Positions 541-55,149 of a DNA stretch of 64,000 nt are shown here, in pieces. Numbering within the stretch: position 1 is the first letter of the stretch; each line of letters begins with the position of its first letter. A model generated the notes under the pieces. That model searched no databases. It had not been told where the DNA came from and saw only the letters and a program-made list of their open reading frames with translations. The translations under genes were made by a program, and so were the position numbers. The DNA comes from Ministeria vibrans ATCC 50519 (taxonomy: Eukaryota; Protista; Filasterea): contig CALSCP010002097.1 of the NCBI GenBank assembly GCA_943704425.1, positions 34,908-98,907 of the forward strand, in the 5' to 3' direction.

Positions 541-545
541 TCAAA

Positions 546-576
<31 letters not shown>

Positions 577-3500
577 GTCGTCGTCGTCGTCGTCGTCGTC
601 TTCGTCGTCATCATCATCATCATCGTCGTCGTCGCAAGCGGCAAATACACTGTCGCGCTTTGCGTCTGCGACTGCCTTGGCGTGTGTGTGTGCCACCTGA
701 CTTGACTTGCGCGGCACTCCCTGCGGCATCACCTGCCGCCCCCCCACATTGGAAATGCGGTCCACAATAACCGCCGCCGCCCTCCCGGAGTTGCTCTCCT
801 CAGCAGACGGCAGTCTTCTCAACGTTCCTCCTCCGCCACTGGGACCTGCTCCGCCGTTGCTCGCAACCGCACTGCTTCCAATCATTTGCGCAACTAGACG
901 ACACAAATGAATACAACAATAAATTAAAAAAAAAACAAAACACACACACACACACACGCACACAAAATACAACAAGAACATTATTATTATACTATTAATA
1001 CCATTCTGACTCGAGCGTTTCTGGCGCATACTCTGACGAATACGTTCTTGACGCTCGGCAGCATCGCCACGTCCGCGTCTGCTCTGGCGGTCGCGCGCAA
1101 AGGCATTGCCACTGCGCAGCGACGCAATGAGGTCGTCCATGACTCCCTCTTGGTCACCCTCGACGTCGAGGCTCAGGTTGCGCTGCCTCGCCTGCTCCTT
1201 CTGCTGCCGCTGTTCTCGCTCACGCTTGCGCTGTGCCTCCTTCTCCTTGCGCTCGCGTGCTTTGGCGTTGTCCATCACCGCTCCGTCAAGCGCATTGAAG
1301 AAGGTCTGGAACGTCCCAAAGAACTCGTCGGGCGCCATGGTCGCAGGGTTCTCGCCAAAAAAGCGCACCACACTGTCGTACTGCTTCATCATGCGCTCGT
1401 ACACACGCTCCAGCTCGCCAAAGTCTGTGCCGGCCTTGTCAACAAACTCGGCGAGCGCCTCGACAAAGCGATCGCCCTCGGGCAGTCCCTGGGAAGTCGC
1501 CTCGGTGATGCTGCGCTTCATCGTCACAACGCCCTTGCGCAGCTCGGCCATGTCTGCCTGCAGCGACGGCAGCGACGAGCGCGCCGCCTGCTTGACGCTA
1601 CGCAACTCGTTCGTCGTCGTCAGCAACTCGCGCTCCTTGTCCTCACAAAACTGCGAGATAAAGTGTAACAGCGAACTGCGGTTGTCGGCCGTCTTGGTGT
1701 TGGCCAGTTTGGTCAGATGCTCAATCTTGAAACCGCGTGCGCCCGCATTGCGACTGCCCGTGTTCATGTAGTTGCCCAGCAGCAGCACGAGCTCGAGCAG
1801 ACGCTCCAGCTTCTTGCTCCCCTTCACGTCTACCGACGCAGCCAGCACTGCCCGGATCTCGGGTTTTACTTCACGCACCATCTCGGCAAAACGCTTCTTG
1901 AACAGCAGATGCGACAAACGCTCGTCAAGCCGCGGCACCGACACTAGAGCCAACGCAAACTGATCCACCTTGGTCAGTGCCGACGGGTTGTCGGCATGCT
2001 CCCGCAGCTTCTCCTCCTCCTCCTTTGACGGTCGGTACTTCAAAAAGTTGTCCAGTGACTGTTCCGTAAACTTGTCTTCCTCCATCGCAATCAGTTGGTC
2101 GCGCATCACCTGCCAATCAACAACAGCACCCAAAGTTGAAAAAAAAAAACAAAAAAAAACATAAGCAACCCGTGACACGATAAAACTTATAGTAAATGCT
2201 GATGATAATAATATTATTATTATGGGTACCGTCGGTTCGGCTTTGAGTCGCTGAAGCAGAATGGACAGGTTGTGGCTCTTCTTGCCCTCGAGACAGGAGA
2301 TACCCTTATTCTTGGCCTTGGCAAGCGCTCCGCTGGCGCCCCCTTCGCCCGACGCAATGTCTGCGCCCGAAGGCTTGGCGCCAAACTGTCGCTGCAGCTC
2401 GAGAAAGTCAATGGAGTCCTCAAAGCGGTTGACGTCTGCCTTGGCCCACACCGTGTCGACAATCTTGGACTCGTTGAATTTGACCCAGTTGAGACGTTTC
2501 ATGGGCACTGCCGGAGTGTGCTTGAGCTCGGGACCCGTCGGACCCGCGGCATTGAACATGCCAAAGACGGGTGGTGGTGGCGGAGCGCCCGGTGGTGGTG
2601 GAGCGTCGGGCACGTCACCCATGGGCGGTGCTGGCGGTGGGGGAGGTGGCGGAGCACCGCCCAATGAGGTACGCGAGGCACGGTTACTTAACACGGAAGT
2701 GTCGGCTGCGCCACCGACACCTGTACCGTCACCCGAACCGCCCGAGCCATCGCCCGTACCCACACCACGCTGTCTCATTTCGTCCATCTGCTGACGCAAC
2801 TCGGCAATCGTCTCTTGCGCCTCCTCAATGGCAAGGTGTGCCTCCTCAAGCTCCGTGTTGAGCTTGAGTTCGCGATCTGTCTTCTCCTGCACGGTCTGAG
2901 CCAGGTCGGTCTCGAGGTCGCCAATGCGCATCTGTGCACTCGCAAGCTTGTCCTGTAGATTGAACTGAACCAACAGACGATCGACGTCCATGGTGAAGTG
3001 CCCCCGAAAGTCCGGGTCGACGCCGTTGCGCTGGAGAATAATCTGCGTGACGGCCTCGTCGATGAGACGAAAGTAGTGCTTGCGGGCGGCGTAGTCGTCA
3101 CGGATGAGCATGAGGTGCTGCAGGATGGAGAGCAGGTGCAATTCTGAGCTCGTACCGCCCACGACGTTTTTCAACAGCATAAAAATCTCCTGTGGGTCTG
3201 TGATCTCCATTTGGATCTTCTCAAAGCGGTCGAGAAGCTCGCTGTAGTCGTGACGCGTCTCGTGCTCAAACACGTCAAGTTGGACGTGCAGTGCGTCGTT
3301 GCCCGTCTGACGCAATGAACCGAGAATGTCGCCGAGACCTAACAGGAGCACTTCGTTGCGCAAGTGCAGACGGAACTCAAGGTCACCGGGACTGTTGACG
3401 AGCGCATTGATGAAGGTGACGCACGCAACCTGCAACGTCACCTTGGTCGCCTGGCTGAGGATGTCGACGAGGGAGGCGAGACGCGTGTCCGATTCGCCAC

Positions 3501-4310
3501 GCGCATTGCCTAGCTGTGTCATGGCTTCGAGGACCATGCGATGACCATCGGGCGGCACGAGACAAACGGCAGCAAGCAACTCGAGCACCATGATGACCGT
3601 CTTTTCCTCGCCTGTCACAATGGCGCGCGCGACGTACATGAGCGTGCCGCTGTTTTGAATCACGTCGAGCAGACCGTGCTTGTTGTTCATGTAGGCCGCG
3701 AGCGACGCCACACACTCGTGCTGAATGGTCTGTTCCAGTTTCTCGTTGTGACGCGGTCGCTCGACGTCTGCGTCTCGCAGCACCTTCATGAGCGTGCTCA
3801 TGCCTTTGATCGACTTGAACTGCTTCACCCACGAGATGGGCTGAGCCTTGAGCGACACCTTGAGGCGCGTGAGCACGTTGGGCAACAGTTTTGGAGCGCG
3901 GATCATTTGAACCTCCTTGAGGCATGTTTCAGGACTGTCCCAGTCTTTGGAGTCGTGTTTCTACAAATTTATTCAAGGAAATAATAATACGCGATGGTAA
4001 ACATTCGAGTTTGGCGTGTGTCATGAATGCACATCTGGCTACTTCGGTACCTCCTCCTTTTTTCGGTGAACGCACAACATGGTCCACTTCTTGGCCATTT
4101 CCTGTTCGAGCATGGGCGCTCGCTTGTCCGGCGGAATGTTCATTTCGTCCATGAGCGAAATAAACTGTTCGTTGAGCTGAGTCTCCGTCATGTCTGTCGG
4201 CATCGGCTTGATCTCCACCGACATGTGCGACTGGCCCATCAGCGACGACGAGGACACGTCGTACTTGGACTCTTTCTTCTTTCGAAACATCATTTTCGAC
4301 TGTGGTCGTA

Positions 4311-21947: not shown

Positions 21948-22103
21948 ATCTNNNCTTTTTTTTTTTTTTTTTTTTATCTTTTTTGTGTTGTCTTGTCCTT
22001 TACCATTGACGTTTGATCGGTGTGACGGTGTGCTGCCCAGGGGGGAAACGGTGTGGCGGACGACACGTTTGTGATGCTAACGACGGGGTTGCTGTGTATG
22101 TAG

Positions 22104-46419: not shown

Positions 46420-46731
46420 ACCTATTAGATATCCTCAAGAATTGCTTGCGACTGAAGCAACCGCAAAGACGGAGAACAAGAAGTACTTCCGTCGTAGGAC
46501 GCGACTTTCCATGATGGTGGGTGAGCAAGCGGAAGACGCGTTGACGGGAGTGGAAGTNNNNGGAGTGTGTGTATGAAGTGTGTGTATGAAGTGTGTGTAT
46601 GAAGTGTGTGTATGAAGTCAGACAAGGCCGTATGTTCCTTCCTTCAATCTTGTTTGAATGAAAATGATATGAATGGTACAAGAACACAATAATTAAAGTC
46701 TCTCTCTCTCTGAGACACTCCGCCTTTTCTC

Positions 46732-49122: not shown

Positions 49123-49393
49123 GGCGGAGCAGAGAAGGAATGAAACAAATTTGTTATTAGATTTGTCTTAATAACTCTCGATTGAGCTATTTGAGTAGCA
49201 ACCGAGTAAAAATTTGAAATTTAACAGAGTTCGGTAATATAAGGTAGGCGGTTCAAACGGAGTTCAAACTTGACGAGACTAGGACTACGCTGGCAGCACG
49301 GCAGCACCGAGTCTGTGAATGCTGGCCCTCAGGCCCTGATTGGTGCCTTCACTAACCTCCGAAGAGTTCCAAAATAATCATAATAATTTATTG

Positions 49394-49446
49394 TGGCTGT
49401 GTCTTTGCGTGGTGACTGTATCATTAATAAATGGGTTGTATTCTTC
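49394..49446. repeat. 53-bp dispersed direct repeat, copy 2
   Basis: Near-identical to 46367-46419. Confidence 0.9.
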
Positions 49447-49531
49447 TTCTTCTTCTTATTATTATTACTAAAAGGGTTGTATTCTTCTTCTTCTTATTAT
49501 TACTGTAAAATATATATTATATAAACACTAT

Positions 49532-52500
49532 CTAACATATTGTTGACAAGAGCATATCATCGTCATGGCCACTGTCGCTACTCCACACACTCGACGTGTC
49601 CTCGCAGTCCTTCCCCTCACTCACTGCCTCCGTCGCCTCCGTCTCGTCGCCCACCAAAGCCTCCACCACATGACCATTGTTCTTGCCTCGATCCTGCGCC
49701 TCAAAGACAAGTCGTCGTGGCTTCAACTCCGACTCCGTGTCTTCCTCCCCCTCTTCGGTCGTTCCCAATTCTCCTCTCATCATCATGTCTTCGTCGTCCT
49801 CCTCTTCGTCATCATCGTCCTCATCCTCACCAAACAGCTTCAGACTCGCATGGCCCATAAGCTGCGCAATCAAATGGTCCTTGGTAATGATGCCCACCAG
49901 ACGACCCAACTTGATCACAAACACATAGGGAAGCTTAAGCATTGTAAACAGAAAGTGCACCTCATAGGCAGGCGTCATCTTGACCACATGAAAGGGATTC
50001 TGGTCAATGCCGTCCGCAGTTGCATACACATCGACCGGCCGTGTGTCCAGATAGTCAAGCTCCTCGTCTGTGAGTCGCTCGAGACACTGACATTTCTCAC
50101 CGGCAAACTCACAGTTGCGTCGCGTCTGCTTCAGTTCGGTGTACTTGCTGAACAGTGCCTTGGGTGCTTGTGATGTGGTTGAGTGCCCCGTTGATGTCTG
50201 TGGCAGTGCGTTCGATGAGTTCCCACCACCACCACCACCAACGGAAAATCGTCCTTCGCTAGGATCCTCACGAATAGGAGTGGAAAGCACAGACGAAGGC
50301 ATCGACGCACTGGGCTCCGGACTGAAAATGTTGGCAAAGGTCTCGTCGATGGACGCGCGCGGCTTAAGTGCAGTACCACGCAGTCGCGACGTTGTCATAA
50401 CTGCCTCGGCATCGCGTGCGCGGATCTTACGCACACTTGCACGGGCATCCTCGGCAATGCGCGCCAGAGCTAAAGGTCGGGGACGCGGTCGTCGCCCCAT
50501 CGCAGAGCTCGCGCTCGCCTCGTCGTGGGGCAGGTGCTCCGGCTGTGGCAGTCCGTCGTCCTCGTTTACGATAATGTCTTCTTCAGCAATGGACGCGGGA
50601 ACGTCAACACACTGTGATTGTTGTTGTATAGCGTCTGAGTCGCCATTCGGTATCAACGTGCGCGTCGCGGCAGACGTTGTTACATCGTGTGGAGTCACAT
50701 CGGACACGGTAAACTTACTTCCAACAACCGTCTCCTTCTCGAGTGTGGCTTCAGGCGTGACAACATCGGTCACATGGAAAGCACGGTGTGGTGACATGAC
50801 AGCCGTCGTCGTCGTCGTCGTCGCTGCTGCTGCTGCTGCTTCGTCCAAATTTGCCACTGCACTCACACTCAGTGTGGATTCCTTCTCCTCGACAACCTCC
50901 TCCACGGAAAATCGCTTGGGTGAAGACAAAGAAGATGCCTCGGGGACATGCTCCACAGCAAATCGTTTTGGTGCAGCAACGGACGGGTCTTCGGCGACCT
51001 CCTCCACCGAAAACCGCTTGGGTGAAGACACAGAAGATGCCTCGGGGACATGCTNNNAAATCGCTTGGGTGAAGACACAGAAGATGCCTCGGGGACATCC
51101 TCCACAGCAAATCGTTTTGGTGCAGCAACAGGTGAGTCCTCGACAACCTCCTCCACAGTAAATCGCCTAGATGAGGAGACAGGAAAAGACTCGGGAACAT
51201 CTGCCACAGAAAACCGTGTCGAAGGAGCAACACGTGCCTCCTCCTCGATCTCTTCCACAGCAAATCGCGTAGAAACCAACACAGATGCTTCCTCCTCCAC
51301 AACATCATCTACGGAGAAACGCTTGGAAGTGGGCACTGCCTCCTCCACGACATCCTCCACTGAAAACCGTTTCGGAGCCAACACAGTCGCCTCTGCAACC
51401 TCTTCCACTCCAAACCGACTCGGCCCCGACGCGGCCTCCTCCTCCACTGCAAAACGATTGTCACTCGGCACGCTCACACTTGACTTGTCCTCTTCAAGCA
51501 CATCTTCGACCGAGAATAGCTTGGGTTTCGCCTCCGTCACTCCCTCCACCCCAAAGATCACCTCTCCATCCTCAACAGGCTCCACATCAAACCTACCGCT
51601 GCTACTCCCTTCAACCTTCATCTTTCCCGCTTCACACCGACTCGTCGCAGTGCTTTGTGCCGTCGTCTCTTCTGCCTTCTCCCCCTCCTTTTCCTTCTCC
51701 CCTACCTTGCTCTCATGCGACGCCACATGATCGGGTGTGTCTACAAGACTGACCGAAAACGATCGATGAGGCGACATGATAACAACGGTCGCGTCCTTGG
51801 GAATCCCCGCATCGGCAGCATTCGCGTCGACATGCGTGCGTTCTTCGTCGCGAACACCAAAGCCAACGTGGCGTGGCCGTGTCGACGGTACGGGCGAGTC
51901 AGGAAGGTTGATAGACACGTTTCGCAAAACGCGCCCTTCGCTGCCGGGCACATCCTCTTTGGAGCGTGAAGTGCGCATGGCAGACGCGCGTGGCCGCTCA
52001 TCCTTGTTTGGGGGTTCCCACATGGCGGCGTCTGCAATGATGATCGACGGTGGCCCTTGTTTGTCCACACCGGCTCCAGCTCCCTGCTTTGCGGCGATTC
52101 GCTGCGGATGACTCTCGCCGGCAATGGCCTTGGCGGCTTCCGTGGCAAGCTCGTCGTCGCCGTCGGTGAGTGAGGGTGCACACGAAGTGTTGAGCAAGGG
52201 GCGGTTCCAGCCCGCAAATGCCTTGTTGGTGAACAGCGTCGCCTTGGTCACCGTCACATAGTTGGAATTGATGAGACGCGCCGACTGGACATTGGCGTCC
52301 TGCGCCGCGCCAATGCTAATGCCCATGGTAGCAAGGGTGATCTGCGACGTAAAGTAGATGCCAGTGCCAAGCACAGACTCCTGGCAGGTGTCCAACAGCG
52401 GATTGGCCTCGAGCACATCAATCATGCCAACTTCCTGGAGCACACACTCGTCGTGAACGAGGCGCTCGAGCGCCGTGCGGTCCACGGCACCCAGCAGCAG

Positions 52501-54589
52501 GTTGTCGTCGTTTACGAGTGGCAGCGCAGCCAGAGGTACATCACCAGGATCTTCTCGGAGGATGCGAGCCAGCGCGCCATACGTCGTGTTGCAGCTGACC
52601 ACATGGGGCGCGTCAATCATGAGGTCGCCGGCCGTCTTGGTAGCCATGGAATCGGTAAGCAGGCGTGGCAAGTAGGGCAGGTGTTTGGTGCGCGTGATCA
52701 TCTCGTAGATGCCTTCGCCCAGCACGTTGCCAACACCGACGCTGATAATGACGGCAAGCAGCACAGGCAGCAAATAGGCGAGTGACGTGGTCATCTCAAA
52801 TACCACCACAGCCGCCGACACGGTGCGTGTTGTGCCGGCAAGCAGTGCTGCTGCACCGACGGCCGCATAGCCACCGGCGACAATGCTCGGCCCAAAGATC
52901 TCGCGCGAAATCTCGCCGACAAAGCGTCCAAGTGCACTGCCCGTGACCAGCAGTGGCAGAACAAGACCGATGGGGACGGGCAAAGTAATGGAGACGGCCG
53001 CGAGGACCCAGCGCGTACAGAAAATGACGGCCAGATCGCCGTAGATGCCGCCCGAGTCGGTGCCCCAGTCGCCAGCGTTGGTCACGTTGCTGTTGACGAG
53101 TGGGACGGGACGCAGAATGTCCTCAAAGAGGCTGATCATGGACAGGCGTGAGTACTCACCTGGTGGAAACAGAATGAGACCCGTGGCAAGGGAGATGGCA
53201 AGAGACAGACGATGGGGCCGACGAAACACCCACCAGTCGTCGTGTTTGCGGCGAAACACAATGAAATAGTTGGACAGACGCACAAAGGCATGACCAAGCA
53301 GACCGCCAAGCAGGCCGAGCAGGATAAAGGCGGCAAATTCAAGACGGATCCAGCCAAGGGGATCGTACGGCTGCGCAAACAGCGATATATACTCCTCCTT
53401 TTGCGTCAGATACACCACCAGCGAGCCACATAGTGCGGCCACCGACGATTTCCAGTAGTTGGCCACGAGGTAGTAGATGGCCGTCACCTCAATGCTAAAC
53501 AGCACTCCTCCAATAGGCGCTCCAAAAGCAGACGCAACGCCCACGGCAGCGGCGGCAGCAAGTACTTGTAATCGTGATGACTGAAATGAGAAGTAAAAAA
53601 ATAAAAAGAATAAAGGAGGATGAAGAGTGTGTGCATTTTCTTTCCAGTACCTTTGACTTGCGAATTTTGTGAAAGAAGGGCAGTTTCATGAGAAGAGTGC
53701 CAATGGCAGCGGAGATGTGGACAAAAGGACCTTCGCGACCGCCTTGCATACCACTCCCAAGCACAAAAAGGAGGCCAAGCACTTTGCTGAGGAGCGTGCG
53801 GAAGTTGAGAAAGCCCGGAATGTCAACACCGCTGAGAATGGTGGAGATTTCGGGAATGCCTGAGCCGGCTGCCATGGTGCTGATATACCGCACCGTGATG
53901 TAGCCAATGCTAAAGATAAAGGTGCCATAAAGAACAAAGATGCTATACTGAGCGAGCCAGCTGGTTGACTTGTCCATGAGCGTGACACGCGACGACAGGA
54001 GACCAGCAATGGCACGACCCAGGCCAAAGTCGAGGAGAGCCGCAAGTGCACCCAGCACCATCAATAAGGCGGTAGTGCCAAGCTGGTGATCGTAGAGCCA
54101 CGTGACAAACCGTCGCCAGGCGCTCTGGTTGAGCTTGCGCGTCGACTCAGGTTGAGACAGCACGATTTTCGTTTCGGCACTCTTCATGCTGCACACAAGC
54201 ATAGCGATCCGGAAAGGGTCAGCGGTGGGCGAAAGGCGCACAGACACACACACACAGACACAGTCGTACCTGGTGCCCGAAAGATAGGACTCGTAACGGC
54301 GCTGAAAGGCGCGTTGTGATGAGCCAACATCAGCAATATGGCCACTGCGACCCAAACGACAAAAAAAATGGAATGGAAAGCGCGTGAAAACAACATCAGC
54401 GAAGCGGACATTTTAGCAGGGGAAGAGCATGAAAAGCGTACGCGTTACGAGACAGGGCTGCGCCTTCTTCGGCGAGGGCGTGCCGGAACGAGCCGTACGC
54501 GGTCTGATCGAAGTGTTTGTGGACGAGTGGCGTGTCGGGCTGTGCGCCCGAATTGCGTGCCCCCAACAAGGGGTTGGGACTTCTGCCAT
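49532..54589 (-). CDS. CLC chloride channel (CLC-1/2-like) with a very long CBS1-CBS2 insertion; N gap at 51055-51057
   Basis: GSGIPE, GREGPFVH, AFGAPIGGVLFSIEVT (Val at the proton-glutamate site, i.e. channel type), IYEMI...LPYLP, CBS1 and C-terminal CBS2 (IDQNPF...VHFLFTML...GRLVGIITK). Confidence 0.93.
50890..51600 (-). repeat. Coding tandem repeat of ~17-aa (K/R)RFxVE(E/D)V units within the CLC gene
   Basis: Near-identical DNA units (AATCGTTTTGGTGCAGCAAC / CGCTTGGGTGAAGACACAGAAGATGCCTCGGGGACAT) on both sides of the N gap. Confidence 0.9.
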
Positions 54590-55149
54590 CCTGCAGGCGG
54601 ATTGCAGCTCGTCTCCGTAATCTCGTGGCCGGAGACATAGCAATTGTAGAACCAAAAAATGTGAATGAATTAAAATGTGTGAAACATAATTATGATACTC
54701 TAGTCATTCTACTTTTTTCACACTTTTTTTGTTGAGTGCATGCTTCACTGATCAGCTGACTGTTGACTAGGGACAGTCAAACACCAAACTCCCAGGAAAG
54801 AAGAGGAGAAAACCATCGCTTAAAAGAAAGTGACTCATTCGCCAACCGCTCCCTGCGCACACGACCGCCACTCCAAGAACGACGAGGACACTCGCTCAAA
54901 TACACACAACAGCTGCAACTCACACGCATAATCACGAACTCACTCGCATTGTACTCCTTCAGTTCACTGTACACAACAAATCTCAGTCAGTTGTGCAGAG
55001 CCATTGAGCGAACACATTGCATCAGGTGTCGCTCATTTCGTGCTCTCCATTTCACAAGACAAATGATAAAAAGAAAAAAAACCATTGGAACAAACAGGCA
55101 TTCGCACGAATGAAGAAGCAAGTTTAGATTCATACGGTACTTTTTTGCA

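What the first reader, a model, noticed from the sequence alone, without database searches (positions are those of the whole stretch)
50240..51770. CLC chloride channel carrying an amplified array of RFxV (SPAK/OSR1/WNK CCT-docking) motifs
Seen: the long disordered linker between CBS1 and CBS2 holds 13 complete RFxV motifs (RFDV, RFAV x4, RFGV, RFSV x6, RFTV) and one more cut by the N gap. It also has RxFxV variants (RSFSV, RAFHV) and near-matches (KLFSV, KFTV). The core is a DNA tandem repeat with near-identical units spanning the gap, so the true copy number may be higher. R, F and V stay fixed while the spacers diverge, which points to selection on the motif itself. Several copies are preceded by Ser/Thr (SPKRF, STRF, TSKRF). 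Known: RFx(V/I) binds the CCT domain of SPAK/OSR1 and is used by WNK kinases and cation-chloride cotransporters, usually in one or a few copies; C. elegans CLH-3b is regulated by the SPAK orthologue GCK-3 through such a motif. Inference: a multivalent kinase-docking or condensate scaffold fused to an anion channel, which could be an ultrasensitive cell-volume or osmotic switch in a unicellular eukaryote.
Basis: partly seen in the sequence, partly recalled or inferred. Interest (0 to 1): 0.85.

Follow-up and report, generated by a model that had tools for sequence, protein, structure and literature searches.

The report
Chloride channel with amplified kinase-docking motifs
A chloride channel of a non-photosynthetic, probably animal-related protist carries at least 13 copies of the short RFxV motif that animal OSR1/SPAK kinases use to dock on ion transporters, which suggests that this way of controlling cell volume predates animals and has been greatly amplified here.

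Summary
A minus-strand, four-exon, channel-type CLC gene (49532-54638) holds 13 complete RFxV motifs plus one cut by the 3-N gap, in a roughly 750-residue CBS1-CBS2 linker built on 51-nt and 149-nt coding tandem repeats.

Transcript contigs spliced at three GT..AG introns cover the parts of the array on either side of the gap, so it is not spliced out. The gap itself stays open.

The genome encodes the whole pathway:
- An OSR1/SPAK orthologue whose C-terminal CCT domain keeps all six peptide-contact residues.
- A true WNK kinase.
- An SLC12 cotransporter, NKCC-like by my reading, whose N-terminus carries two motifs with the same flanks (RFxVEEVP).

Genome-wide, the extended motif RFxVE[DE]V has 14 matches. 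Ten lie in this CLC, its paralogue and that cotransporter.

R, F and V are kept (pN/pS about 0.01-0.02) while their codons and the spacers diverge. About 64 of 108 homologues, almost all of the named ones animal ClC-2-like channels, carry one RFx[V/I] in the same linker, as does C. elegans CLH-3b.

No array relative turned up in 1.84 billion representative proteins.

Verdict: probably a multivalent CCT-docking array, a new variant of a known kind. Binding, condensate formation and switch-like behaviour are untested.

The scan had already noted the paralogue's array (s1-764140).

The parts
49532..54638 (-). Coding span of a channel-type CLC gene. Start ATG at 54636-54638, stop at 49532-49534, four exons. 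The protein is at least about 1,600 aa, not counting the gap.
   Evidence: Pfam Voltage_CLC 2.2e-41 and 2.7e-17. Exon joins come from the spliced transcript contigs of runs X6 and X7. The start Met is conserved in the paralogue. Colinearity across the gap is shown by the uninterrupted 1092-aa paralogue ORF.
53581..53650 (-). Intron, 70 nt, GT..AG.
   Evidence: Joint in the X6/X7 contigs. Splice-site letters checked.
54189..54269 (-). Intron, 81 nt, GT..AG after a 1-nt shift of the reported boundary.
   Evidence: The X6/X7 record runs from 54189 straight to 54271. Sequence check.
54345..54441 (-). Intron, 97 nt, GT..AG.
   Evidence: Joint in the X6/X7 contigs. Checked.
53488..53866 (-). Pore and selectivity motifs: GSGIPE (53849-53866), GREGP with the gating Glu (53726-53740), and GAPIGGVLFSIEV (53488-53523) with Val where exchanger-type CLCs have the proton Glu.
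   Evidence: Coordinates. The channel-versus-exchanger reading of the Val is established CLC knowledge and was not tested here.
52462..52632 (-). CBS1.
   Evidence: Pfam CBS at residues 305-361 of the 891-aa ORF, 17.3 bits, below the cut-off. The region is highly conserved in the paralogue.
50903..51594 (-). Core array: 12 complete RFxV units plus one cut by the gap. Unit consensus is V-x-x-x-[KTSR]-R-F-[ASGTD]-V-E-[ED]-V-x-E, spaced 13-18 aa.
   Evidence: AF2 on 51058-51618 gives mean pLDDT 49.7 and no secondary structure apart from one 5-residue helix. Transcript contigs are contiguous over 51069-53580 and 49510-50922.
50909..51200 (-). Recent 149-nt (three-unit) super-repeat, the youngest part of the array. 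It spans the gap.
   Evidence: TRF: 2.0 copies, 84% matches. De Bruijn contigs break here in all runs.
51055..51057 (.). Assembly gap (NNN) inside a repeat unit. The frame shifts across it, so its size is unknown.
   Evidence: It was not closed by the contigs of four runs.
51751..51765 (-). RSFSV, an R-x-F-x-V class motif in the context MSPHRSFSVSLVDTP, upstream of the array.
   Evidence: The RxFx[V/I] class binds the OSR1/SPAK CCT (PMC12413468).
50771..50785 (-). RAFHV, a second R-x-F-x-V class motif in a similar context (MSPHRAFHVTDVVTP), downstream of the array.
51508..51558 (-). Two decayed units (IFGVEGV and KLFSVEDV). F and V are kept and R is lost. KLF aligns with KLF in the paralogue.
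   Evidence: Mutating R to K abolishes CCT binding in vitro (PMC12413468).
50705..50716 (-). KFTV, a decayed unit.
50240..50251 (-). Isolated RFSV in the context EGRFSVGG (G at -2), about 650 nt downstream of the array. It is not conserved in the paralogue.
49859..50035 (-). CBS2, followed by an acidic C-terminal tail.
   Evidence: Homology to the paralogue's CBS2 (Pfam CBS 25.9 bits). Coordinates.

Best explanation
The inter-CBS linker of this ClC-2-like channel is a disordered, cytoplasmic array of docking sites for CCT-type domains. The main reader is probably the C-terminal CCT domain of the organism's OSR1/SPAK orthologue, and possibly also the CCT-like domain of its WNK kinase.

Proposed mechanism:
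- WNK, which senses chloride and osmotic state in animals, activates the OSR1-like kinase.
- The kinase's CCT domain binds RFxV or RxFxV units on the channel linker.
- The tethered kinase phosphorylates Ser/Thr residues in the linker, which changes gating through the CBS domains. This is what happens in C. elegans CLH-3b, where binding of GCK-3 to one RFLI motif in the equivalent region is required for inhibition.
- The same kinase docks on two identical-flavour motifs in the N-terminus of an NKCC-type SLC12 cotransporter, so chloride entry and exit are controlled together.

With at least 14 weak sites per subunit (single animal motifs bind with Ki of about 2.5-13 uM), and so at least 28 per CLC dimer, occupancy and rebinding would be high.

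What is shown: the motif array, its transcription, purifying selection on it, the presence of the pathway components, and the shared motif flavour. What is inferred: binding, phosphorylation, the direction of the effect on gating, and any benefit of the copy number.
For: 1. All 13 motifs are confirmed.
2. The array is exonic. X6/X7 contigs are spliced at three GT..AG introns and run contiguously over 51069-53580 and 49510-50922. The DNA contigs of X1 keep the introns.
3. There is a PF12202 hit over the cut-off at C1890 (37.7 bits; 36.7 bits), at the C-terminus of an STE20 kinase with the T-loop TFVGTPCWMAPEVMEQ. [quoted passage not shown] In that alignment the six OSR1 residues that contact the peptide (I450, F452, D459, E467, L468, L473; bioRxiv 10.1101/2021.08.19.456998) are all identical.
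4. There is a true WNK: GTGAFKTVYKG and EVAWNEL (no beta-3 lysine), KCDNIFI and GTPEFMAPEMY. Its CCT-like segment has WNK1/WNK2 CCT-like domains as its top three PDB hits.
5. An SLC12 cotransporter (Pfam AA_permease and SLC12) has ARFVVEEVP and KRFAVEEVP in its N-terminal ORF.
6. A genome-wide DNA pattern for RFxVE[DE]V gives 14 hits against 6 for the reversed control. Six are in this CLC, 2 in its paralogue and 2 in the SLC12 N-terminus. The other 4 are 2 copies of a transposase-like ORF, a short open frame and a frame that looks non-coding.
7. Selection: the R, F and V codons have pS 0.45-0.56 but pN 0.005-0.011. Spacers have pN/pS 0.79-0.84. R uses four different codons.
8. AF2 predicts no fold.
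9. About 64 of 108 homologues, almost all of the named ones animal ClC-2-like, carry one RFx[VI] 44-65 aa after CBS1.
10. For CLH-3b the motif is experimentally required for kinase binding and channel inhibition (PMC2217494; PMC2606941).
11. Both the RFx[V/I] and the RxFx[V/I] classes bind the OSR1/SPAK CCT (PMC12413468).
Against: - No binding data exist. The complex prediction gave no verdict.
- The flanks differ from validated animal motifs. Position +3 is Glu rather than Ser/Thr, and phosphorylation at +3 weakens binding in animals. Position -2 is mostly Lys rather than Gly/Ser. By my reading of the unit translations, seven of the 12 core units have Pro at -3, and Pro near the core is disfavoured in peptide arrays (PMC12413468). 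Single-site affinity could therefore be low.
- The last six or so units are recent duplicates, so their identity says little about selection.
- My units were anchored on the motif, which biases the pN estimate. This is mitigated because 12 consecutive units all keep the motif.
- The paralogue has lost the motif in 3 of 6 units, so individual units are dispensable.
- The named non-animal CLC homologues have no motif.
- That the SLC12 N-terminal ORF belongs to the transporter gene is inferred from adjacency only.
Confidence: 0.6

Rival explanations
1. Founder-motif hitch-hiking. One ancestral functional RFxV motif, as in animal ClC-2-like channels, sat inside a replication-slippage-prone coding repeat and was copied passively. 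Only one or a few copies matter, and the high copy number has no function of its own.
For: The 149-nt super-repeat is recent (84% identity). The paralogue manages with 3 intact units and lets 3 decay. Animal channels have one motif. Decayed units flank the array.
Against: The eight older units have near-saturated synonymous and spacer divergence (pS about 0.56, spacer pN about 0.57), yet none of 12 consecutive units has lost R, F or V. Passive copies should decay as the flanking ones did.
Confidence: 0.2
2. The repeat is read by something other than a CCT domain. Examples are a lineage-specific partner that recognises the longer unit V-x3-[KT]-R-F-x-V-E-E-V-x-E, or basophilic or proline-directed kinases. 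KRFS fits an R/K-R-x-S site. SPKR and SPHR fit the minimal CDK consensus [ST]-P-x-[KR].
For: The conserved unit is longer than RFxV: V at -6 relative to F, and E, E/D, V and E after the motif. The flanks differ from those of validated animal CCT ligands. SPKRF or SPHRxF occurs five times. CDK1 is reported to inhibit ClC-2 (cited in PMC2217494).
Against: The x position is Ser or Thr in only 7 of 13 motifs, so a phospho-acceptor there is not what is conserved. Outside the two CLC paralogues, the one other real protein context with the extended motif is the N-terminus of an SLC12 cotransporter, which is the classical CCT client. The CCT pocket is fully conserved.
Confidence: 0.12
3. The repeats form a folded beta-rich repeat domain or a purely physical spacer (an entropic bristle), and the RFxV pattern is structural.
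For: There are alternating hydrophobic and polar residues (F-x-V, V-V) in each unit. The linker is very long.
Against: AF2 gives pLDDT about 50, pTM 0.12 and no strands (single sequence, weak evidence). Spacer length varies from 13 to 18 aa and spacers are rich in Pro, Ser and Ala. No homologous repeat domain was found in 1.84 billion representatives.
Confidence: 0.04

Closest known systems
C. elegans CLH-3b and the kinase GCK-3 (a ClC-2 orthologue regulated by the SPAK/OSR1 orthologue)
   Same: Both are channel-type CLCs with an RFx[V/I] motif in the cytoplasmic region between the CBS domains. In CLH-3b, kinase docking through this motif is required for phosphorylation-dependent inhibition, and the regulatory serines lie 70-75 aa downstream in the same linker (PMC2217494, PMC2606941).
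   Different: CLH-3b has one motif (RFLI) in a 101-aa splice insert. Here there are at least 13-14 RFxV units plus 2 RxFxV motifs in a linker of about 750 aa. The flanks are acidic (RFxVEEV). The organism is a protist and nothing has been tested experimentally.
Conserved single RFx[V/I] in the post-CBS1 linker of animal ClC-2-like channels (molluscs PRFxVTKVDE, arthropods RRPSRFEVTP, fish VRFQIS)
   Same: Same protein family, same linker position (44-65 aa after CBS1). The mollusc form even shares the R-F-x-V-x-x-V-acidic pattern.
   Different: One copy per protein in animals. The named non-animal homologues have none. Whether the protist array is homologous or convergent is unresolved.
N-termini of NKCC1, NKCC2 and NCC (SLC12), which carry one or two RFxV motifs that recruit SPAK/OSR1
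   Same: The same docking logic. This organism's own SLC12 cotransporter, NKCC-like by my reading, has two N-terminal motifs with the same flanks as the CLC units.
   Different: Two copies rather than an array, and a cotransporter rather than a channel.
WNK kinases with several RFxV motifs, and WNK condensates
   Same: Multivalent CCT ligands in long disordered regions of the same pathway.
   Different: In animals the multivalent scaffold is the upstream kinase, with a handful of motifs. Here the large ORFs of WNK show no RFx[VI] or RxFx[VI] at all, and the multivalency sits on the effector channel. Phase separation was not tested.

Membership tests
CLC family, channel-type (ClC-0/1/2/K-like) | Voltage_CLC transmembrane domain | tested here: met
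   PF00654 at 2.2e-41 and 2.7e-17 on two exon ORFs. Best named homologues are animal ClC-2-like proteins.
CLC family, channel-type (ClC-0/1/2/K-like) | Selectivity motifs GSGIPE and G(K/R)EGP with the gating Glu, and Val rather than Glu at the proton-glutamate position | tested here: met
   GSGIPE, GREGP and FSIEV were located. The link between Val at this position and channel type is established knowledge and was not tested.
CLC family, channel-type (ClC-0/1/2/K-like) | Two C-terminal CBS domains | tested here: inconclusive
   CBS1 scores 17.3 bits, below the cut-off of 24. CBS2 gets no Pfam hit in the window ORF but is colinear with the paralogue's CBS2 at 25.9 bits.
SPAK/OSR1 CCT-docking short linear motif (RFx[V/I] or RxFx[V/I]) | Core consensus with R at -1 (or -2), F at 0, V/I at +2, and no Pro at +1 or +3 | tested here: met
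   13 RFxV and 2 RxFxV motifs. Position +1 is A, S, G, T or D, and +3 is E, D, A or G. Criteria are from PMC12413468.
SPAK/OSR1 CCT-docking short linear motif (RFx[V/I] or RxFx[V/I]) | Lies in an accessible, disordered, cytosolic region | tested here: met
   AF2 pLDDT 49.7 and no secondary structure apart from one 5-residue helix (single sequence). CLC C-termini are cytoplasmic (established knowledge).
SPAK/OSR1 CCT-docking short linear motif (RFx[V/I] or RxFx[V/I]) | A CCT-domain reader with an intact primary pocket in the same proteome | tested here: met
   PF12202 over the cut-off. Six of six OSR1 contact residues are identical.
SPAK/OSR1 CCT-docking short linear motif (RFx[V/I] or RxFx[V/I]) | Flanks like those of validated animal motifs (-3 Val, -2 Gly/Ser, +3 Ser/Thr) | tested here: not met
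   By my reading, position -3 is often Pro, -2 is mostly Lys and +3 is Glu. The same non-animal flanks occur in this organism's SLC12 N-terminus, so this may be a lineage flavour.
SPAK/OSR1 CCT-docking short linear motif (RFx[V/I] or RxFx[V/I]) | Physical binding that depends on F and R | not testable with these tools
   It needs peptide or protein binding assays. The complex prediction returned no verdict.
   Pkinase hit on the exon carrying TFVGTPCWMAPE. The CCT lies in the last three exons and ends at the stop codon.
WNK kinase (G000:C271) | Catalytic Lys moved from beta-3 to the glycine loop | tested here: met
   GTGAFKTVYKG followed by EVAWNEL.
Multivalent condensate scaffold | Many weak binding sites in a disordered chain | tested here: met
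   At least 14 units per subunit.
Multivalent condensate scaffold | Phase separation or clustering with the partner | not testable with these tools
   It needs in vitro reconstitution or imaging.

The most novel reading that the evidence does not exclude
The channel linker is the pathway's scaffold. In this organism the large WNK ORFs carry no RFxV motif, so OSR1 cannot dock on WNK in the animal way. Instead WNK (through its CCT-like domain) and OSR1 (through its CCT) would both be recruited to the array of at least 28 sites on the CLC dimer. The chloride channel itself would then nucleate the chloride- and volume-sensing kinase cascade and give a switch-like, self-referential feedback on chloride efflux. 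The copy number would tune the threshold.
Probability: 0.12. Interest if true: 0.85.

Novelty: new variant of a known kind. Interest (0 to 1): 0.62.

Why it matters
STE20-kinase docking on a ClC channel has been shown experimentally in one animal protein, CLH-3b. This case gives three things:

1. A complete WNK - OSR1/SPAK - SLC12 - ClC-2-like module in a non-photosynthetic protist. It is probably a unicellular relative of animals, on weak markers only. This would push the origin of the module back before animals.
2. An RFx[V/I] motif in the CBS1-CBS2 linker that is widespread in animal ClC-2-like channels. This suggests kinase docking is a general and under-appreciated feature of the subfamily.
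3. A natural experiment in multivalency: 3 intact units in one paralogue against at least 14 in the other. With it one can ask directly whether the copy number of a weak docking motif sets the occupancy, processivity or sharpness of a cell-volume response.

If the array turns out to be passive repeat expansion, the finding is still a clear example of a short linear motif riding on a coding tandem repeat.

Tried and rejected
- **Complex prediction.** The verdict was 'no answer', which is neither for nor against binding. The design (a split domain, a peptide, no alignments) lies outside the tool's calibration.
- **Joined spliced models.** I did not hand any joined model of the CCT domain, the kinase or the full CLC to a search or folding tool. 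Exons were searched separately by reference. The join made was used only inside a script, to check the frame and the start codon.
- **Exhaustive phmmer with the 187-aa array.** One hit came back, P0109, an unrelated HRRTTDT-type repeat protein. No array relatives were found.
- **Two metagenome scans for orthologues.** Nothing was found, so copy number could not be compared across species.
- **AF2 of the WNK CCT-like segment.** pLDDT was 52, the model was all-helical and it was uninformative, so no fold search was run.
- **Closing the gap.** All contigs break in the repeat.
- **Organism identity.** Run and organism names are coded and no protein of this genome is in the protein database.
  - There is no LHC gene.
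  - DHFR and TS are unfused.
  - The window holds a Diaphanous-type formin whose best hit is an EukProt model prefixed 'Clim', which I take to be Corallochytrium, followed by animal proteins.
  - Together these point to an opisthokont, probably a holozoan. I first guessed a stramenopile alga and dropped that.
- **FFAT/VAP and PP1 RVxF readings of the repeat.** I considered both and rejected them on the sequence pattern alone.
Full report
**What is in the sequence.** The region belongs to a minus-strand gene for a CLC protein. Pfam Voltage_CLC matches two exon ORFs at 2.2e-41 and 2.7e-17. Their coordinates run from 51583-51594 down to 50903-50914, with an isolated one at 50240-50251. A fourteenth unit (SPKRF) is cut by the three Ns at 51055-51057, and the frame shifts across them. 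The variants RSFSV, RAFHV, KLFSV and KFTV are there, as is IFGV. TRF finds a 51-nt (17-aa) period and a younger 149-nt three-unit super-repeat that spans the gap.

**Gene model and transcription.** Logan contigs of four public runs were laid on 49300-54700.
- Contigs of runs X6 and X7, from a differently labelled organism or strain (2025), skip 53581-53650 and 54345-54441.
- They also skip an 81-nt stretch at about 54189-54269.
- All three skipped stretches have GT..AG ends on the minus strand.
- The DNA contig of run X1 keeps these stretches, so X6 and X7 hold spliced mRNA.
- Their contigs run without interruption over 51069-53580 and over 49510-50922. The parts of the array on either side of the gap are therefore exonic, and no alternative joint removes the array.
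- The middle (50893-51129) falls into short unitigs in every run, as expected for near-identical repeats. The gap was not closed.
- A variant unitig at about half depth and another at about 1.5x depth hint at one or more hidden units or an allele.

The first in-frame ATG is at 54636-54638 and is matched by the paralogue's start. The protein has at least about 1,600 residues. It carries GSGIPE, GREGP and FSIEV. Val at the proton-glutamate position is the channel-type signature, which is established knowledge. The linker between CBS1 (about 52462-52632) and CBS2 (about 49859-50035) is roughly 750 residues long.

I used the exon join only inside a script to check the frame.

**Is the motif selected?** I aligned the 12 core units codon by codon. 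The unit consensus is V-x-x-x-[KTSR]-R-F-[small]-V-E-[ED]-V-x-E.

| Codon set | pS | pN | pN/pS |
|---|---|---|---|
| R, F and V | 0.45-0.56 | 0.005-0.011 | about 0.01-0.02 |
| Spacers | 0.66-0.68 | 0.52-0.57 | 0.79-0.84 |

Arg is encoded by CGA, CGG, CGT and AGG. Anchoring the units on the motif biases this estimate. However, 12 consecutive units between 51456 and 50903 all keep R, F and V, while the spacers of the older units are close to saturated. The youngest units are recent copies and say nothing about selection.

A paralogue on contig C1721 is 78% identical over the first 585 residues of the query, which cover the conserved transmembrane-CBS1 region. It has six units in the same linker, three intact (RFSV) and three decayed. 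The array is therefore older than the duplication and evolutionarily labile, and single units are dispensable.

**Is there a reader?** Yes.
- PF12202 (OSR1_C) matches contig C1890 above the curated cut-off.
- The match is the middle of a three-exon CCT domain that ends at the stop codon.
- Upstream lie a Pro/Ala-rich stretch and STE20 kinase exons with the T-loop TFVGTPCWMAPEVMEQ.
- In that alignment the six OSR1 residues that contact the GRFQVT peptide are all identical. They are I450, F452, D459, E467, L468 and L473 (bioRxiv 10.1101/2021.08.19.456998).
- One nearby residue is charge-reversed (OSR1 E462 to Arg). This could suit the acidic residues after the motif, but that is inference only.

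Contig C271 encodes a true WNK. It has GTGAFKTVYKG followed by EVAWNEL, so there is no beta-3 lysine, plus KCDNIFI and GTPEFMAPEMY. It also has a CCT-like segment whose three best PDB hits are WNK1 and WNK2 CCT-like domains, at weak E-values of 0.02-0.3. Its large ORFs contain no RFx[VI] or RxFx[VI].

**An independent cross-check inside the same genome.** Pfam SLC12 finds three cotransporter loci. One, on C1993, has a first transmembrane region that I read as NKCC/NCC-type (my reading of the FGWIKGV..LNIWGVMLFIRLSW signature, not tested). It also has an upstream ORF with two motifs, ARFVVEEVP and KRFAVEEVP. That is the position where animal N(K)CCs carry their SPAK/OSR1 docking motifs. That the ORF belongs to the same gene is inferred from adjacency.

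A DNA pattern for RFxVE[DE]V over the whole 29.7-Mb genome gives 14 hits, against 6 for the reversed control. Six are in this CLC, two in the paralogue and two in the SLC12 N-terminus. The other four are two copies of a transposase-like ORF, one short open frame and one frame that looks non-coding. The extended motif is thus essentially private to chloride-transport proteins of the known WNK-OSR1 client classes.

**Comparison with relatives.** The best homologue in 5.8 billion proteins is only 41% identical. The next ones are animal ClC-2-like channels and oomycete CLCs. None has more than two RFx[VI].

About 64 of the 108 carry exactly one, at a relative position of about 0.7. Examples are PRFxVTKVDE in molluscs, RRPSRFEVTP in arthropods and VRFQIS in fish. 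In three examples checked with Pfam it lies 44-65 residues after CBS1, in the same linker. The named non-animal hits have none.

C. elegans CLH-3b, a ClC-2 orthologue, is the tested case:
- Its motif RFLI lies at R678.
- The F679A mutation abolishes GCK-3 binding.
- The regulatory serines lie 70-75 residues downstream (PMC2217494; PMC2606941).

Both the RFx[V/I] and RxFx[V/I] classes bind the OSR1/SPAK CCT, with Ki of about 2.5-13 uM. Mutating R to K kills binding, and Pro near the core is disfavoured (PMC12413468). An exhaustive phmmer search of 1.84 billion representatives with the array found no relative. Two metagenome scans found no orthologue.

**The organism.** Names are coded. The genome has no LHC gene. 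TS and DHFR lie on different contigs. The window's first gene is a Diaphanous-type formin (GBD-FH3-FH2). Its best hit is an EukProt model prefixed 'Clim', which I take to be Corallochytrium, followed by animal formins. I read this as a non-photosynthetic opisthokont, probably a unicellular holozoan. Confidence is moderate and rests on weak markers.

**Mechanism and its rivals.**
- *Docking array (confidence 0.6).* The linker is a multivalent docking array for the OSR1-like CCT, perhaps also for the WNK CCT-like domain. It tethers the kinase next to its phosphorylation sites in the linker and couples the channel to the same WNK-OSR1 signal that controls the SLC12 cotransporter.
- *Points against it.* The flanks are not animal-like: Glu at +3, Lys at -2 and frequent Pro at -3. 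There is no binding evidence.
- *Hitch-hiking (0.2).* One ancestral motif was copied passively in an unstable repeat.
- *Another reader (0.12).* A different partner recognises the longer unit. Overlapping SPKR and SPHR sites fit the CDK consensus.
- *Folded repeat (0.04).* The AF2 model shows no fold.

The complex prediction gave no verdict and is not used as evidence.

**Novelty.** The kind of system, CCT docking on a ClC-2-type linker, is known. What is new:
- the amplification to at least 14 copies;
- its presence outside animals together with the whole pathway;
- the shared lineage-specific motif flavour;
- the apparent absence of docking motifs on WNK.

I class it as a new variant of a known kind.

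Noticed in passing
L016:330-3605 (G000:C1721, minus strand): Paralogous CLC, 78% identical over the first 585 query residues (the transmembrane-CBS1 region). It is one uninterrupted 1092-aa ORF. Its linker has only six units: three RFSV and three decayed (KLFLV, PRVSV, STSVV). This is probably the array noted earlier as s1-764140.
   Followed up: yes
L023:6903-7571 (G000:C1993, minus strand): N-terminal ORF of an SLC12 cotransporter, NKCC-like by my reading, with two motifs (ARFVVEEVP and KRFAVEEVP). They have the same flanks as the CLC units. The link to the transporter exons is by adjacency only.
   Followed up: partly
L022 (G000:C271:1-10000, plus strand): WNK kinase with a very long Gln-rich C-terminal ORF (889 aa, many poly-Q runs). 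There is no RFx[VI] or RxFx[VI] in its large ORFs, unlike animal WNKs. An N run and (CT)n repeats sit inside its introns.
   Followed up: partly
L004:7700-8115 (G000:C1890, minus strand): The OSR1/SPAK orthologue has a Pro/Ala/Thr-rich repeat (units such as TPAADAAAP) between the kinase and the CCT domain. It recalls the 'proline-alanine-rich' region that gives SPAK its name, but at a different position.
   Followed up: no
P0002-P0107 (homologues): A single RFx[V/I] 44-65 aa after CBS1 is conserved in about 64 of 108 ClC-2-like homologues, across molluscs, arthropods, annelids, echinoderms and fish. In amphioxus the motif sits at the extreme C-terminus instead. I did not check whether this breadth is already described in the literature.
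   Followed up: partly
window 50966-51129: In the DNA run X1, a variant unitig with 3 differences lies over 50966-51024 at about half the gene's depth. A unitig over 51062-51129 has about 1.5x depth and a C>G difference at 51099. These are compatible with hidden units in the gap or with heterozygous copy number.
   Followed up: partly
window 50777-50794, 50909-50923, 51011-51025, 51058-51072, 51757-51774: Five units start with SPKRF or SPHRxF. The motif's Arg thus doubles as the basic residue of a minimal CDK consensus [ST]-P-x-[KR]. Most of the paralogue's units also have S/T-P at the same place. This could be a phospho-switch on docking, but it is untested.
   Followed up: no
window 541-3906 (minus strand): A Diaphanous-related formin (GBD, FH3, FH2) as one 1121-aa ORF. 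Its best database hit is an EukProt model prefixed 'Clim', which I take to be Corallochytrium (35% identity), followed by animal Dia formins. This is a hint that the organism is a unicellular holozoan.
   Followed up: partly
L030 (G000:C1830) and L039 (G000:C2125): Two copies of a transposase-like ORF (piggyBac-like by my reading, no domain search run) share the chance match TRFMVEEV inside what looks like a folded domain. The element is repeated in the genome.
   Followed up: no
G000:C1168:138137-139216; G000:C2542:97-345; G000:C761:32803-32961: Thymidylate synthase and DHFR lie on different contigs, so they are unfused. No chlorophyll a/b-binding protein was found in the genome. Both facts fit a non-photosynthetic opisthokont or amoebozoan.
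   Followed up: partly
window 21952-21954 and 46558-46561: Two more very short N runs (3 and 4 Ns), like the one in the array. They probably mark gaps of unknown size rather than three or four missing bases.
   Followed up: no
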